A stretch of DNA of 64,000 nucleotides from Adineta vaga (lineage: Eukaryota; Animalia; Rotifera): NCBI GenBank assembly GCA_021613535.1, contig CP075497.1:11532001-11596000 (forward strand), written 5' to 3'. Of the stretch, positions 5,025-13,340 are shown piece by piece. Position numbers and translations under genes: made by a program. The number at the start of each line of letters is the position of its first letter. Position 1 is the first letter of the stretch. Under the pieces are notes generated by a model. That model worked only from the letters and a program-made list of their open reading frames with translations. It was not told the DNA's origin and did no database searches.

Positions 5025-6541
<1,517 letters not shown>

Positions 6542-7051
6542 CTAAAAGGCGAAAATCATATCAAGGATCTTTTAGTACTAAAACGAAGAGAATATCGAAG
6601 TTTTATTTACAGAAAAAAAAAGGAAACGAAAAAAACAAATCTATAAAATGTATTGCGCTATAAAAGAGAGAGAGAGAGAAAACATAATGTATAATATATT
6701 ATGTGAATCGAATGATTTGAAAAAGAAAATCTTGCACAAACAAAAATTTGTTTTAATCTATACGCCCCTTGTTCGACAGATATTTACAATAAAAAAGAAA
6801 AGAACGATTTGAGCGAAATACAGTCGATAAGTTTGTTAGGGAAATTGTTTTTTGTTCTAGATTATCACATTATATAAATACTTTTCATTATTTGTCAGAA
6901 ATTCTACTGTTCGTTTTGTTAATATCACGGAATGAAATCTTATCTACATGAAACTGTCTTATTTAGTTAGAGAAGTAATCAAGTCAAATCATTGAAAGAC
7001 AAAAGAAGAAGAAGAAGAAGCGACATGAAATATATTCAACAAGATTTTTAT

Positions 7052-7550
7052 CTAATCTAAATCGGCATCAGTTTGATCCGGTCGACAATATTTATTACGT
7101 TGATTGATATGTTGAGAGTAGGAGCCTGAAATTGATGAAATATATGAATGAACAAAAAAACTTGTTTTGAAAAACTACCGGAATGACTGAAACGTTTTCC
7201 ACATTTATCACATGTGTATGGTTTTTCACCAGTATGTAATCGTTCGTGTTCTTTTAAATGATGTTTATGTTTAAATCTTTTCGAACATGTTGAACATTGA
7301 TATCGTCGTTTATCATCTTCAACGTGTTGATTATTTGTATATGATGATGATGATGATGTTGATGTTGGTGCAGTATTTAAATGTTCCTGAGATCCATATG
7401 GTCCAATTGTATGATGAAAATGTCCTGTTGTTGATGAAAGGGATGATTTGATAGAAGATCGATTTGCTTTTCGATTGATTGGTAATGATGATGAAGATGT
7501 TGATACATCATCTTGTGTATCAGATAAATCACTATCTCCTGATAAACCTC
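7052..7550 (-). CDS. Two exons (7550-7179, 7125-7052) encoding a ZEB/Zfh1-type C2H2 zinc-finger pair; candidate alternative 3' end of SMARCC
   Basis: Spliced translation [42 protein letters not shown]|[15 protein letters not shown] matches the ZEB C-terminal finger cluster; starts at a phase-1 acceptor (CTTCTAG|GA). Confidence 0.85.
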
Positions 7551-8044
7551 CTAGAAGCAGCAAAGAAACATAAAACAATCAGATTGGATTTTTTTCTATA
7601 CAGATTTATATATGTATATTTTTTGCTTGTTTTCATTTTTTTAATGATCAACAACAAATAAGAAATAATATAAGACGCGTTATTATAACACATACAAAGA
7701 ATTTTCTTTTCTCTCATTTGCTGTTTTAGCTCTGACAAGAACAGATAGATAATTTGAAATTTCTAATAGAAGTAAATATATATATATGTATAATACACTA
7801 AGTTTTGTGTATGTAAGTGGCAGCAAGTAATGTATGTGTTATTTGAAAAGAATAAGAGAAGAAAGAAAGAAAGAAAGGAAAAAAAGAATCAAATTCTAAT
7901 AACAGACGACACACACACATACACACAAAGATCATTCGAATGAGTTTACACGCCTGGCCGGCAACTTTTTAAGAGAAGACGCTCGAGAGAATGAAACACA
8001 GAAAACGACGATGAGAAAACACACAAAAAGATTTGTTTAGTTTG

Positions 8045-11000
8045 TCAATAATTAGAATTATTTGAATTGTCAGCTTCTGCAATGGCAGGAACAGGAGCAT
8101 TAAGAACACTATCATTTGTTTCACTACCATTTTCACCGGTGTTTACAATGAGTATTTTCTCTGTTGTAGTTATGGTTGTATTACTAATTGTAACACCAAG
8201 AGAAGATGCAGTTTCTGTTGTTGTTGTTGTTGTTGTTGTAGTTGTTGATGTTTCCATTGCTGTCTCTTCCACTGTACCGCCTGAAATTGGAAAAAGATAA
8301 TAACAAGAAAACAGAAGGAAGAGAAAACGAAAGAAGACAAACTATTGCATATTGTCAAATATACAATAAATAATGAATAGAACAACATCATAAAATATGT
8401 TCATAGGAGTGAAAGATACAAAAGAATTGCTGTGTTTCTTTTTCATGCATCAATTCATTGTCTTCTACTAGAGAAAAGAAAAATAAGATGATGCATGCAG
8501 TCCCATATATATATATATATACATATATTCATGTGTAGTGATATGTACAAAACAATGACGACAGGTAAAAAAGATCATAGATATGAAGTGAACATGCAAA
8601 ACAAGGACAACATTGACAAAACAACAAATATGCTCTCTTCCCTCTCTCCCTCTCTCTTTGGTTCACTTTAGCATTCTGGCCAGATAACATCAATTGAAAG
8701 ATAGAGAAAACCAACACCCAAGGAATAGACAAAACGATACGATAGTGATAAAACGAAACATAAACAGGCATTTATAGATCATATATGTATGAATGAAGCG
8801 AGTTTCTCTCGAACTAATTGTAGAAAAGATAGTTAAGAAAGAAAGAAACAATGTCAATAAAGCATTAGAGCAGATTCTACCCGTTTCCGTTTTTTGTTTG
8901 TTGAGTTTTCAAAACAAAAAAATAAAATAAAGTATTATTTAAGCAGTATAAATCTACAGTTTGTTTGTTTTTTAGAAATAGAACTAACTAAAAGAAAGAT
9001 ATTCGTATTAAAGCAAAACTAATTGTCGAAATTTGATTCTAAACTGACTAGCGAGAGAGCGTATGTCTTTTTCTATCTGTTGTCAATATGTGTTTAACAT
9101 GTATATGTATATATATTTATGTGCATCTAATGATATACATGCAATAACTACAACAAACAATAGGAAAACGGAGAAAATAAGCAAGCAGCTGATCGAGCAA
9201 ACAAAAATCTATATACACATGCATATTTTACCTTCAAGATTAGCATTATCATTTGCTATTGATGATATCATTTTTGGTGATGGCATTGGAGCTGGTGAAG
9301 CTATGATATAAAACAAGAATATAGAATTCAAATGAAAAGTATGATTTTAGTGTTTAAATTACCATCGCTTGGTTGTGAATCAGTTGAATCTTCATTTGGC
9401 ATCATTGGTTCAGTTCCATTCATTGTTGGTGTAGGAATAATACTTCCACCTGTTGTTGTACTTGTTGTAGTCGGTGGTAGAGATGGTGGTGGTGGACTAG
9501 TATTCGATGATGGTTTACCATTTGTATTGACAAGAAGAGTTTGACTATTATTTACAATTGTTGATGCAGCTGTTGCATTAGAAGTTTGACGATGTTTTAA
9601 TTCCGATGTTTTGATTTGTTCTAATTGAAATTGCTGTCGTTCTTGTAAAAGTTGTTGTCGTTGAATTTCTAACATTTCACGTTCACGATCCATAATTGTT
9701 TCTAATTCTTCAAAATGTCGTAATTTAATTTCAAGTTTTTTTATTTGCATTTCAACAACTTGAGCAACAGCTGATTTTATTTTACGTTCCTCAATCGAAG
9801 CTAAATACTAAAAACAAACAAGAATTTAATTAGCTTTATCAATTTCCCCAAAAAATTTCAATATACTTTAGCTTTAACTGCTGCTGCAGCTAATGCACTC
9901 GCAGCAGCTGTTTTGATATCTCGTTCATTAGTATCATTTGATGAAAGTTTCCTTGCATCTTGATCAGTATTTACACTTGTTGTTTTCGGTGCAGTTGATG
10001 AAGTTTCGTCAGGAATGATTTGAGTATCTGTTTCTGTTGTTGCTTTGTCATTTTCATCAACATCCATTTTTTTCGATTCATCTTCATGATTGACCTAAAT
10101 GAATATTTAGTTGAATAAATGTTCTTCTCTATAAAAAAAAGGAATTCTTACAGATTTATCTGCAGCTGATTGTTGTTGTTCATCATTAACATCCATTTTT
10201 TCTTGTTTTACTTGTGATGAATCTTCGCTACTAGTACCATTCTTTGTTTTGTCTGCAGAATTTTCTCCTTCTAAAATAAAAACCATTGAATAAAAACATC
10301 TTTCTCGTTAATTTCATTCTTATTTACCTGCATTACTGGTTAAACCAAGTAATTCTAAACTTGAATTTTCATCAAGTTCTTTGCCTTTTTTCAAAGCATT
10401 TTCAATAATTTCTCGATTAGTTTCAATAAATGATGGTGATACTTCATCACGCATTTTTGTAAATTCATCTAATGCAGCTTTAACAGATGCACTTGCAACA
10501 CGTGGATCAACAACTGATGCAAGAAATGCCACAGTTGACATAACTGGATTACCATTTTGACTAAATGGTATTGGTTGATAAGCAAGTGGTCCTAATGACG
10601 AGCCATTTCCTTCTAAATATGGATCTTCGATTGGTAATTGAAGAAATTTTAATATACATTCATCTTGTGTTCGTGTACCAACATGTTCACAAACTTTATT
10701 CCAATCATCTTTATACATTTCAAGACCTAAAGATTCCAATCATATGAATGTAAATGAAGATATTAATAAACAAAGTCTTACCTTCGAGTAACAGAAGAAT
10801 TTCTTGATCTGACCAATCTTTTACTTTTGTTTTAGGATTCTAAAAAAGAAATAATTTATTCATCGAAATTTTTCGAAAAACAATTTCACATACTAAAGTA
10901 AGTTTTTTATTGTATTGATCAGTTCTTATACTTAAATTATTGTCCACTTCACGTTCTTCACGTTTTGTTTCTTGTTTCAACTCTGTTAATTGTTTCGATG

Positions 11001-13340
11001 TTGAATTCTATTTACAAAAAAAAATAGAAAAGATAAATCTATCTAAATTAAATCAAACATTTTCTCTTACTTCTCGTTGTATTCCTTTCGGATGTCCAAC
11101 AGGCGCTAAACCACATGGTGTATCACCTAAAACTGTAAAATGTGATGTACATGGTGGTCCCATCGGTGTTGGACGTAAATCAGCATCAACTTGATAATTA
11201 ATTAAACCCCATTGTTCAAGAAATGCATGAATACGCATAATCGCACAAACATCACCAGCAAGATTTCGTCGACAAGCAGTAACAGTTAAATATTCACTAG
11301 GATTTAAACGATATGTATCAATCATGAAATTTCGATAAGCCATGTAACTAAATAAGAAAATAAAATAAGAATAGTTCGTGTCTTTTGCAATAGAATGTTA
11401 CATTTCTGGAGTTTTTGATCGATTTTTTCCATTGAAAAATTCATTTAAACCACGTTTTTCTATTGAATTAATGGCATTATAATCGAACCATGCGGAATAA
11501 CTTGGAATAACAATATGATGTGATTGTTCACAAGCATCTGGTTCATTAAATTTTTTGATTTGATTTGAATCACCTTGGATCTGTTGATCATCAACATCTT
11601 CTTCATCATTTAAATCATTCGATGTACCACCGCGTGGCAATTGTGAATCATTGATTTTTTGACCAGTTAAAGCTAAATTAAAAAAAATACGGACACATGT
11701 TTTCTTTTATTTTCAACTTTTGATTGAAGTATTACGTGTTCTTGATGATGTCTGATCGTCAAAAAGTGATTGAGATAAAGAATTTTCTCCATCTTTTGAT
11801 AAATCATTTTCATCAGTATCCATTGCACTTCCACCACCACGTCCTTTTTTTCTAAAAAAAAATACAATGTTATTTTTTTGTTTGTAAAACAGATCATTGA
11901 TTTACCTTCGTTTAGCAGCTGCTGTATTAGTTGTACCACGTTTTTTCGAATTATTTGTTGGTCCACTTGGAACTGTAGTTGGACTTGGTGCAGTTTTACG
12001 GTCAGGTACAAGCTAAATTATATTAGTTTTTCAGTACGAAATTCTTATTTATTCGTGATAATGCTCTAGTCATTCTTTCTGTCTAAGAACGATATACGAG
12101 AGAGAAAAAGATTTGAATGTCTTTCATTTATCCATGATTGAGAGAATAGAAAGATAAATGAACTTAATACTGCTGTCAAGCTCTTTTTTTATACTTTCTC
12201 AATCAAAAGATCGTTTTCTTACCATTGATAATGTTTTTCGTCCTGAAACACAATTCTTCAATTTAATTCTTCCTTGTTCTCTTCCCTACAAAGTAGATCA
12301 AGACATTCTCTTTCTTTGTCTCGAATATTAGAACATACTAAATCTTCATCAATTTCGTAATCTTCTTCATTCATCCATTCATTGAATTCAGCTGTATCTA
12401 AAATCCAATTGGCAGCGACATGCCAAATACCTTGAAACGTTTCATCTCGTTTCTCTGATTCTTCAGCATCGACATTCGATACCCAAATATCAAATGAATC
12501 TGGATAAAACCAATAATGTAGACGACAATCTTTGCCCCGTTTTTCGACCACACGAACAATTTCATCTATGAAAAAAGAAAATTCTTCAAATATCAAAACA
12601 AAAACTTATCATTTCGTTTTTTCTATACTTTCACGTTCACTATCGATCTCTTTTGGATTTTCTGTGATTGGTGGATAAACAATATGATCAGCATCTTCTT
12701 CATTTTCTGCAACAGTACCATTATTTTTTTCAATAATTTGTTTTAATTGTGTTTGTAAACGTTTATCAATATTTGGACGTAAATAACAGATTGGTAATGT
12801 TAAAACATTTCGTTCAATTAGTAGTTTTTGAATATATTGAAATAACTTTATAACTTCATTTCGCGAATGTTAGATAGATCGAGTTTTTTCCTAAACAAAG
12901 ACATTTTTCTTTTGTACAACGAAACAAATCGATTAGATTTGATTTTTCCTACCAATTATGATTATTTTTATATTCATAACAACCATAAATAATAGTATAC
13001 AGTGCACCTGATTCCCGAAAGTCTAAGAAACATTCCATCTAAAAAAGAAAAACTTCGATTTTCTTGAACTTTTTTTTCTTTTTCTTTGTCTTACAGGAAT
13101 TCGTATGAGTGGTGCTGAACCATTTGATTGTTTTCCAAGATGTTCTTCTTGAAAATGTAATAATTCAATAACAAGTTGAGCGATATTGTCTTTTGTTAAA
13201 TGATTTTGATCATCACCAAACACTTTCTTTAATTCTTTTTTTTGCAAGGCTTTACGAATGGTATCAAATTGATTTAAGGTTTCAACAGAGTCGAAAAATT
13301 TTATATTTGGATGACCGTCCTTGTGACGGATGATGGACAT
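8045..13340 (-). CDS. SMARCC: SWI/SNF (BAF) core subunit SMARCC/BAF155-170/Moira; multi-exon, with candidate alternative last exons
   Basis: Chromo-like [22 protein letters not shown]; [47 protein letters not shown]; [33 protein letters not shown]; [14 protein letters not shown]; [21 protein letters not shown]. Confidence 0.95.

What the first reader, a model, noticed from the sequence alone, without database searches (positions are those of the whole stretch)
7052..9300. SMARCC (BAF scaffold) appears able to splice into ZEB/Zfh1-type zinc fingers
Seen: the last shared SMARCC exon (9300-9232) ends in a phase-1 donor (GAA G|GTAAAA). Downstream on the same strand a phase-1 acceptor at 7551/7550 (CTTCTAG|GA GGT TTA) continues in frame through a Ser/Thr-rich linker into two C2H2 fingers with the ZEB signature [28 protein letters not shown] found no convincing start exon, homeodomain or other ZEB finger cluster for a standalone gene between 7550 and 9230. 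Known: SMARCC proteins have no sequence-specific C2H2 fingers, ZEB clusters bind E-boxes (CACCTG), and mammalian ZEB1 is reported to recruit the BAF ATPase BRG1. Inference: a chimeric isoform could tether BAF directly to E-box targets, switched by last-exon choice.
Basis: partly seen in the sequence, partly recalled or inferred. Interest (0 to 1): 0.92.

Follow-up and report, generated by a model that had tools for sequence, protein, structure and literature searches.

The report
Rotifer SMARCC gene with optional ZEB-finger tail

Summary
The window is Adineta vaga. SMARCC lies on the minus strand (13340-8045). Its exon 9300-9232 ends in a phase-1 donor (D1). A phase-1 acceptor at 7551|7550 (A2) opens a 123-codon exon without any Met. 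That exon, plus a last exon after a 53-nt intron that RNA contigs show spliced, encodes the last two fingers of a ZEB C-terminal cluster.

RNA contigs show that D1 normally joins 8280, a terminal exon with its own stop at 8047-8045. Two contigs do carry non-adjacent letters upstream of A2, and D1 fits both best.

The comparative evidence is strong:
- The SMARCC-finger arrangement, the acceptor and the matching phases are kept in both A. vaga paralogs, in Rotaria and in Didymodactylos.
- The fingers are under purifying selection.
- No start codon is conserved.

Against this, the assembled RNA contigs of two other bdelloids show only the unspliced read-through form, so a fusion isoform is probably minor.

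Verdict: partly supported, about 0.55 that the fusion isoform is real. It would be a new variant of a known kind.

The parts
8045..13340 (-). SMARCC (BAF155/170-type) coding region, canonical isoform. It corresponds to the annotated I4U23_030896, 1063 aa.
   Evidence: ORFs and Pfam hits to SWIRM, Myb/SANT, SWIRM-assoc_1 and SWIRM-assoc_3. Thirteen introns are seen as CT..AC joints in RNA contigs. P0275 is the matching protein.
9232..9300 (-). Last exon shared by all proposed isoforms ([23 protein letters not shown]). Its donor D1 lies at 9232|9231, phase 1.
   Evidence: Sequence. The joints 9300->9363 and 8279->9231 appear in runs X1, X3 and X5.
8281..9231 (-). Intron from D1 to A1. It is 951 nt, whereas most other introns of the gene are 53-63 nt (one is 210 nt).
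   Evidence: Motifs shared with the paralog and with Rotaria are visible.
8045..8280 (-). Canonical terminal coding exon (G-GTVEE...[11 protein letters not shown]...NSNNSNY*), with the stop at 8047-8045.
   Evidence: Translation. RNA joint to D1. The C-terminal tail ...ENDN.NNNNY* is conserved in Rotaria, L007, L008 and the paralogs.
8126..8128 (-). Candidate internal donor D2 (GAAAATG|gtagtg, phase 1). Several public fusion models use it.
   Evidence: The GT is present in most lineages but is replaced by GC in the R. sordida main gene and by AT in its paralog. A. vaga RNA contigs run straight across it.
7551..8044 (-). Ultraconserved non-coding block. It is the 3'UTR of the canonical mRNA and would be part of the intron of a finger isoform. 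Canonical contigs end at 7584-7591, after a TATAAA at 7610-7605.
   Evidence: Mean column identity 86% among A. vaga and two Rotaria. Nine-sequence alignment. Contig pieces covering 7584/7591-8201.
7627..7636 (-). Annotated mini-exon ATGAAAACAA with a GC donor (the 'MKTR' start of I4U23_030895). Probably an annotation device.
   Evidence: The ATG and/or the donor are absent in L007, L008, L017, L020, L022, the paralog and the P0002 species.
7179..7550 (-). Finger exon 1. It follows the branch-point-like CTGAT, a pyrimidine tract and the acceptor A2 (7551|7550, phase 1, in a TAG|GAG tandem). It encodes an acidic and Ser-rich linker, finger 1 and the first half of finger 2.
   Evidence: RNA contigs stop matching the genome at 7549 or 7552 and then carry 30 or 4 other letters.
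7126..7178 (-). 53-nt intron inside finger 2 (SHSG|SYSQH).
   Evidence: Spliced out in contigs of X1, X3, X5 and X6 and in L007 and L008.
7052..7125 (-). Finger exon 2 (rest of finger 2, then [17 protein letters not shown] and the stop TAG at 7054-7052). A 3'UTR follows, down to at least 6665.
6541..6543 (-). Start of the next gene (KRR1-like). Its ATG (6541-6539) comes straight after an AG (6543-6542), so it is probably a spliced-leader acceptor.
   Evidence: Synteny in Rotaria.

Best explanation
The two finger exons (7550-7179 and 7125-7052) are an alternative 3' coding end of the SMARCC gene.

Most transcripts splice D1 (9232) to 8280. They end with the short conserved tail ...NSNNSNY* and either stop near 7590 or run on with the finger exons as untranslated 3'UTR.

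A minority would splice D1 (or, in some lineages, the internal donor at 8128) to the acceptor at 7550. That would give a SMARCC scaffold whose C-terminus carries an acidic/Ser-rich linker and the last two fingers of a ZEB C-terminal cluster. A core BAF subunit would then have its own sequence-reading module.

Shown:
- the exon structure
- transcription of the exons
- use of the acceptor region as a boundary in RNA contigs
- coding selection on the fingers
- lack of a start codon
- conservation of the arrangement
- phase match between D1 and A2

Inferred:
- the D1|A2 junction itself
- the abundance of that isoform
- DNA binding (an E-box-like CACCT site) and any recruitment of BAF
For: - The finger open frame (148 codons over both exons, from A2 to the stop) has no Met. 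The spliced leader, verified in the genome in 59 copies, has no ATG.
- The annotated ATG mini-exon and its GC donor are not conserved.
- The fingers are under purifying selection. Third-codon differences are 0.16-0.34, against 0-0.09 at positions 1 and 2. The frame is open from A2 in 11 loci, and a 3-nt indel sits right at the acceptor.
- The gene order ABC transporter / SMARCC / fingers / KRR1 is kept in Rotaria sordida and R. sp. Silwood2. SMARCC-fingers is kept in Didymodactylos, in the A. vaga paralog on contig C3 and in the R. sordida paralog.
- D1, A1 and A2 are phase 1 in every locus read.
- Public models with SWIRM+SANT+zf-C2H2 exist in A. vaga (paralog, P0284), A. steineri, R. sordida, R. 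magnacalcarata and Didymodactylos. P0278 and P0291 use D1|A2.
- A. vaga RNA: the X5 contig matches only down to 7549 and then has exactly 30 (k-1) further letters, as the D1|8280 junction contigs are read to have. The X3 contig matches through 'AG' (7552) and then has 4 foreign letters. That fits ...TTGAAG of D1, not ...AATG of D2 or ...ACAA of the mini-exon. One hidden joint in that output is unaccounted for.
Against: - No D1|A2 joint was displayed.
- In X3 one contig of depth 42.7 appears to cross D1 to 8280 without a branch. The depths around D1 in X5 (14.4 in, 14.3 out) leave little room for a second outlet, yet the finger contig is about as deep (16-22) as the gene body.
- Logan contig L008 and JGI RNA contig L007 run unbranched from the SMARCC coding sequence through the stop, the 3'UTR and the unspliced acceptor into the finger exons.
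- No RNA-derived fusion ORF of 432 aa or more appeared among the listed hits (best 120) of the length-matched protein searches.
- All fusion proteins found are automatic gene predictions. Such predictors tend to merge a start-less ORF with its upstream neighbour.
- A. vaga's own annotation, built with transcript evidence, keeps the two genes apart at this locus.
Confidence: 0.55

Rival explanations
1. The finger exons are an independent small gene, as annotated (I4U23_030895, 151 aa). It would be transcribed from inside or through the SMARCC 3'UTR. It would start at the ATGAAAACAA mini-exon (7636-7627), joined by a 76-nt GC-AG intron to 7550.
For: - The public model P0001 has this structure, and the annotation pipeline used transcript alignments.
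- The finger contigs are about as deep as SMARCC and are separate from the 3'UTR contig.
- The 30 extra letters of the X5 contig could in principle lie at 7626-7655.
- The ATGAAAACAAGC string is identical in A. vaga, two Rotaria, L021 and L023.
Against: - The donor GCAAAA is unlike the 14 GTA.. donors of this locus.
- The ATG or the GC is missing in L007, L008, L017, L020, L022, the A. vaga paralog and the P0002 species (ACG).
- A. vaga contigs run unbroken across 7627, which a well-used donor should prevent in a de Bruijn assembly.
- The X3 contig has 'AG', not 'AA', before 7550.
- The identity of the string is not informative, because the whole block is 86% conserved.
Confidence: 0.15
2. The acceptor at 7550 is a spliced-leader trans-splice site. 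It would cut a downstream cistron out of a SMARCC-fingers-KRR1 polycistronic transcript, as in an operon. The finger protein would then be made from a non-AUG start, or not at all.
For: - Bdelloids trans-splice a 23-nt leader to more than half of their mRNAs (PMC1925144, citing Pouchkina-Stantcheva and Tunnacliffe 2005).
- The leader gene is present in 59 copies.
- Canonical contigs end about 40 nt upstream of the acceptor, after a TATAAA. The KRR1 ATG follows an AG directly.
- The X3 contig ('AG' plus 4 letters) also fits the leader end ...CAAGAG.
- RNA coverage is continuous from SMARCC to KRR1.
Against: - A leader-capped mRNA would have no in-frame AUG, and no near-cognate codon in the leader frame, yet the fingers are clearly under protein-level selection.
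- The X5 contig stops matching at 7549, not 7552, and carries 30 letters, more than the 22-23-nt leader.
Confidence: 0.12
3. The finger exons are an untranslated remnant of a captured ZEB fragment. They would persist only as part of a conserved SMARCC 3'UTR.
For: - L007 and L008 show the exons inside a long read-through SMARCC transcript, downstream of its stop.
- The neighbouring non-coding block is itself extremely conserved.
Against: - Substitutions in the fingers concentrate at third codon positions.
- The frame is open in 11 loci across deep splits and in both paralogs.
- Indels keep the frame.
- The internal intron is kept and spliced.
Confidence: 0.05

Closest known systems
SMARCC1/SMARCC2 (BAF155/BAF170; yeast Swi3, Drosophila Moira)
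   Same: SWIRM, SANT/Myb, SWIRM-associated regions and the coiled coil are all present. The canonical isoform (P0275) has the ordinary architecture.
   Different: The known family members that the searches listed outside rotifers (mainly vertebrate SMARCC1/2) show no C2H2 fingers in their precomputed Pfam domains. Here a conserved pair of ZEB-type fingers lies in frame behind the last shared donor, in both paralogs and across bdelloids.
ZEB1/ZEB2, Drosophila zfh-1, C. elegans zag-1
   Same: The two fingers and the tail ([35 protein letters not shown]) match fingers 2-3 of the ZEB C-terminal cluster. Identity is 72% to a fish ZEB1 and 70% to the ZEB-like protein of Adineta ricciae.
   Different: There are only two fingers, with no N-terminal cluster, no homeodomain and no first finger of the C-terminal cluster. 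An intron splits the second finger; the match to the ZEB-like locus on A. vaga contig C5 runs in one open frame across that position. Bdelloids keep a separate ZEB-like gene with a homeodomain (P0466, P0477).
Alternative last exons giving two C-termini from one gene (competition between splicing and polyadenylation)
   Same: One donor (D1) faces two in-phase acceptors (8280 and 7550). Each is followed by its own stop and apparent 3' end. The intervening sequence is highly conserved, as is common around regulated exons.
   Different: Use of the distal acceptor from D1 is not demonstrated. Read-through transcripts that keep the proximal exon and still splice the distal intron are the form seen in other species.
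Spliced-leader-resolved operons (nematodes, tunicates, chaetognaths)
   Same: Genes on the same strand are tightly packed, an acceptor lies shortly behind an upstream 3' end, and the leader is abundant in this genome.
   Different: The would-be downstream cistron has no start codon.

Membership tests
SMARCC / SWI3 family | SWIRM domain | tested here: met
   PF04433, E = 3e-19, in exon 11343-11053.
SMARCC / SWI3 family | SANT/Myb domain followed by the SWIRM-associated regions and the coiled coil | tested here: met
   PF00249, PF16498 and PF16495 in exons 10739-10320 and 9750-9328. PF16496 is on record for the full protein P0275.
ZEB / zfh-1 family | ZEB-type recognition helices in paired fingers (KHKHHL.EH and SHSGSYSQH) | tested here: met
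   70-72% identity to ZEB C-terminal fingers 2-3. ZEB1/2 and zag-1 are the most frequent named non-rotifer hits, apart from multi-finger KRAB-type proteins whose many fingers add up to higher scores.
ZEB / zfh-1 family | Two finger clusters flanking a homeodomain | tested here: not met
   Only two fingers are found. No homeobox hit in the exons, and no other finger ORF between 7550 and 9230.
Alternative last-exon gene | The same donor joined to each of two terminal exon sets in RNA | tested here: inconclusive
   D1|8280 is seen in three runs. D1|7550 was not displayed: two joints were hidden, the X5 contig has 30 unplaced letters and the X3 contig has 'AG' plus 4 letters.
Alternative last-exon gene | Reading frames of both terminal exon sets compatible with the shared donor, and conserved | tested here: met
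   Phase 1 at D1, A1 and A2 in A. vaga, its paralog, the R. sordida paralog and Didymodactylos.
Spliced-leader operon, downstream cistron | Leader sequence joined to the acceptor in RNA | tested here: inconclusive
   The leader was verified in the genome. The X3 contig end is compatible with it, the X5 contig is not.
Spliced-leader operon, downstream cistron | Downstream ORF with its own initiation codon | tested here: not met
   No Met in the finger frame of A. vaga, and none before the fingers in most relatives. No ATG in the leader.

The most novel reading that the evidence does not exclude
Bdelloid rotifers make, from both of their SMARCC paralogs, a BAF core scaffold with built-in ZEB-type fingers. 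Choice of the last exon (D1 to 8280, or D1 to 7550) would switch the remodeller between an untargeted form and one with intrinsic sequence reading. The roughly 500-nt ultraconserved block between the two ends would be the regulatory element of that switch.
Probability: 0.4. Interest if true: 0.75.

Novelty: new variant of a known kind. Interest (0 to 1): 0.6.

Why it matters
Core BAF/SWI-SNF scaffolds are thought to be brought to DNA by separate transcription factors. ZEB1 recruiting BRG1 is one described case. A scaffold subunit that carries ZEB fingers itself, kept for the whole history of bdelloid rotifers and in both duplicated copies, would be a natural experiment in hard-wiring a remodeller to a sequence motif. 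It would also show how one donor with two in-phase terminal exon sets can toggle that property.

Even if the fusion proves rare, two results stand. The locus has a non-coding block more conserved than the neighbouring coding linker. And public annotations treat the same architecture inconsistently: fused in some genomes and split in others.

Tried and rejected
- **Library-wide search.** The search of the finger exon against the 1.84-billion-protein representative library was swamped by multi-finger proteins and gave nothing usable.
- **JGI metagenome scan.** A scan for the start of the finger exon found five bdelloid contigs. All were genomic DNA with the acceptor region unspliced. L015, labelled as from a human-gut metagenome, was left unread and unused.
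- **Search for RNA-derived fusion ORFs.** None was listed.
- **Loose end at 7771.** Its 30 letters are not in the window. I read it as a low-complexity mis-join.
- **Internal donor D2 as a conserved splice site.** It looked promising, because the GT is kept while the residue changes G/S/C. But R. sordida has GC and its paralog has AT at that place.
- **Mini-exon start.** Rejected as a general solution because it is not conserved.
- **Rfam.** Nothing reached threshold in 6600-9300.
- **PDB sequence search.** It returned only generic C2H2 proteins.
- **Distant ENA contig.** A contig with SMARCC and the fingers from a more distant organism had no DNA on hand.
Full report
**What is there**

The window comes from the bdelloid rotifer Adineta vaga. 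The finger exon is 100% identical to the NCBI protein I4U23_030895, and the upstream gene to I4U23_030896.

On the minus strand a SMARCC gene runs from its ATG at 13340 to a stop at 8047-8045. Pfam finds SWIRM, Myb/SANT, SWIRM-assoc_3 and SWIRM-assoc_1 in its exons.

Exon 9300-9232 ends ...CTTGAAG|gtaaaa with one base of the next codon (donor D1, phase 1).

Downstream, the sequence ...ctgattgttttatgtttctttgctgcttctag|GAGGTTTATC has a branch-point-like CTGAT, a pyrimidine tract and an AG at 7552-7551. The codon GGA spans the boundary, so this acceptor (A2) is phase 1.

The frame then runs 123 codons through an acidic and Ser/Thr-rich linker into [41 protein letters not shown], without a single Met. 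A 53-nt intron (7178-7126) interrupts the second finger. The last exon gives [24 protein letters not shown] and a stop at 7054-7052.

**What the RNA shows**

Their contigs carry minus-strand GT..AG joints for all 13 SMARCC introns in the stretch, so they are RNA.

- D1 is joined to 8280 in three runs. This is a terminal exon that reads G-GTVEE...[11 protein letters not shown]...NSNNSNY* and is the ordinary SMARCC end.
- Contigs continue unbroken from 8201 down to 7584-7591, just after a TATAAA at 7610-7605. That looks like the 3' end of the canonical mRNA, about 40 nt upstream of A2.
- The finger exons form separate contigs (6665-7124 joined to 7178-75xx, with the 53-nt intron removed in all four runs). 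Their depths (17-22) are similar to the gene body.
- At A2 these contigs leave the genome. In X5 the match ends at 7549 and exactly 30 (k-1) more letters follow, the form I infer for the D1|8280 junction contigs. In X3 the match runs through 7552 ('AG') and 4 foreign letters follow.
- Of the candidate upstream partners, only D1 (...TTGAAG) fits both. The internal donor at 8128 (...AAAATG) and the annotated mini-exon (...AACAA) fail the X3 test, and contigs cross both places without a branch. The spliced leader (...CAAGAG) fails the X5 test.
- The output hid two joints. One must be 7124->7178. The other is unknown.

So a cis-splice into A2 very probably exists, and D1 is the best-fitting donor, but I did not see the junction.

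**Comparative evidence**

- *Homologues.* The finger exon has full-length homologues of 120-176 aa in many bdelloids.
- *Synteny.* In Rotaria sordida and R. sp. Silwood2 the order ABC transporter / SMARCC / fingers / KRR1 is the same as in the window. In Didymodactylos, a distant bdelloid, the fingers again follow SMARCC.
- *Paralogs.* A. vaga has a second, shorter SMARCC paralog on another chromosome (contig C3) with the same layout: D1, an exon with its own ...NNNNY* stop, then A2 and the fingers. The Rotaria sordida paralog has it too.
- *Phase.* D1, the proximal acceptor and A2 are phase 1 in every locus read.
- *Selection.* In the fingers, differences from A. vaga are 0.16-0.34 at third codon positions against 0-0.09 at the first two. 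The linker is only weakly constrained, but it stays open and in frame from A2 in 11 loci. One lineage has a clean 3-nt deletion right at the acceptor.
- *No conserved start.* A. vaga has no Met at all, and most relatives have none before the fingers. The in-frame ATG inside the pyrimidine tract exists only in some Rotaria. The annotated ATGAAAACAA|GC mini-exon loses its ATG or its GC in L007, L008, L017, L020, L022, the paralog and another Adineta-like species. Its donor GCAAAA is also unlike the 14 GTA.. donors of this locus.
- *Spliced leader.* I verified it as 59 genomic copies of TGCTTATTACAACTTACCAAGAG against 0 for the control. It has no ATG. Bdelloids trans-splice it to more than half of their mRNAs (PMC1925144).

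The only conserved way to translate these exons is to enter them from a coding exon upstream, and the only same-strand gene upstream is SMARCC.

**Public gene models**

Automatic annotations already contain SWIRM+SANT+zf-C2H2 proteins:
- A. steineri: P0273 and P0285
- R. magnacalcarata: P0277, P0278 and P0288
- R. sordida: P0286
- Didymodactylos: P0287 and P0291
- A. vaga paralog: P0284

Others use a donor inside the proximal exon (...NTGENG|).

That internal donor (8128 in the window) keeps its GT in most lineages even where the residue changes. It is GC in R. sordida and absent in its paralog, so it cannot be the universal route. D1 can.

These models are predictions, not transcripts. They show that in-frame sites exist everywhere, not that they are used.

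**Evidence against a major fusion isoform**

- Two RNA-derived contigs from other bdelloids run without a branch from the spliced SMARCC coding sequence, through its stop and 3'UTR, across the unspliced A2, into the finger exons, whose own intron is spliced. These are L007 from a JGI sample and L008 from a Logan run.
- A third contig (L030) retains the last two SMARCC introns.
- No RNA-derived fusion ORF was listed in the length-matched protein searches.
- In X3 and X5 the depths around D1 leave little room for a second outlet.

The common RNA forms are therefore canonical SMARCC with a short 3'UTR, or with a long 3'UTR that contains the fingers. A fusion isoform, if real, is a minority or is stage-restricted.

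**What the fingers are**

The pair is 72% identical to fingers 2-3 of the C-terminal cluster of a fish ZEB1. It is 70% identical to the same fingers of the ZEB-like protein of Adineta ricciae, including the tail after the last His.

It is not a ZEB gene. There is no homeodomain, no N-terminal cluster and no first C-terminal finger. Bdelloids also keep a separate ZEB-like gene with a homeodomain. Whether two fingers suffice for CACCT-type recognition was not tested.

**Most likely mechanism**

One transcription unit has two in-phase terminal exon sets. D1 to 8280 gives the ordinary scaffold. D1 to 7550 would give a scaffold ending in ZEB fingers.

The 494-nt block between the stop and A2 shows 86% mean column identity among A. 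vaga and two Rotaria. That is more conserved than the coding linker beside it. It contains the presumed proximal polyadenylation site, so it is a natural candidate for the element that controls the choice. I put this model at about 0.55.

Rival explanations:
- a separate small gene as annotated: 0.15
- a spliced-leader-resolved cistron with unconventional initiation: 0.12
- an untranslated relic: 0.05
- the remainder is unassigned

**Novelty**

I found no paper on a rotifer SMARCC with fingers.

The architecture exists unremarked in public automatic annotations. I rate it a new variant of a known kind, with moderate to high interest that depends on one simple junction count.

**Procedural notes**

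L015, from a sample labelled human gut, was not read. The scan's earlier notes did not bear on this locus.

Noticed in passing
window 7551-8044 (minus strand); L004 9546-10036; L007 3407-3856; L008 1710-2282: The non-coding stretch between the SMARCC stop and the finger acceptor shows 86% mean column identity among A. vaga and two Rotaria, with long invariant blocks. One such block is TCTTAAAAAGTTGCC.GCCAGGCGT..AACTCATTCGAATGATCT. The core GAATGATCT survives even in the paralog and in Didymodactylos. This stretch is better conserved than the adjacent coding linker.
   Followed up: partly
window 8281-9231 (minus strand): The last regular SMARCC intron is 951 nt, in a gene whose other introns are mostly 53-63 nt. 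It shares motifs (for example GCTCTCTCGCT.G.CAG) with the paralog and with Rotaria. There is a weak, sub-threshold match to an H/ACA snoRNA model (ceN59, E = 0.56) at 8369-8499. Low RNA depth at 8800-9200 comes with loose ends and may be a repeat.
   Followed up: no
genome G000, e.g. C1:2551160-2551336 and C5:9884356-9925969: There are 59 copies of the bdelloid spliced-leader sequence TGCTTATTACAACTTACCAAGAG. Most lie as head-to-head pairs about 154 nt apart and in clusters.
   Followed up: partly
window 6539-6543 (minus strand): The KRR1-like gene's ATG follows an AG directly (ccttttag|ATGGGT). This looks like a spliced-leader acceptor. RNA depth is continuous between the finger 3'UTR and KRR1, so the three genes may be co-transcribed.
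   Followed up: no
window 10489-10728, and the joints 9762->10182 and 10226->10489: A second set of RNA contigs with 17-19 differences and non-canonical 'joints' lies on the SANT region. These are probably transcripts of the paralog on contig C3 laid on this locus.
   Followed up: no
L030 3370-4233 (Logan SRR14782835): This is an otherwise fully spliced SMARCC RNA contig of another bdelloid that retains the last two introns. It hints that the 3'-terminal introns are slowly or conditionally removed.
   Followed up: no
window 7547-7552 (minus strand); L020, L022: The finger acceptor is a tandem TAG|GAG. Two other bdelloid lineages lack the GAG, so the first Gly codon of the exon is optional.
   Followed up: no
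ENA contigs of ERZ1426828, ERZ1426852 and ERZ1426531 (no DNA available): A more distant organism also has a SMARCC ORF and the same split ZEB-type finger pair on one strand of a 6-kb contig, with two further ORFs (231 and 156 aa) between them. The linkage may therefore be older than the bdelloids.
   Followed up: no
L029 13160-13210 (Didymodactylos): Here the proximal exon is only 33 nt up to the conserved ...ACCGGTGAAAATG|GT, and reading on gives just GDKMLY*. The long ...ENDN.NNNNY tail of other bdelloids is absent.
   Followed up: partly
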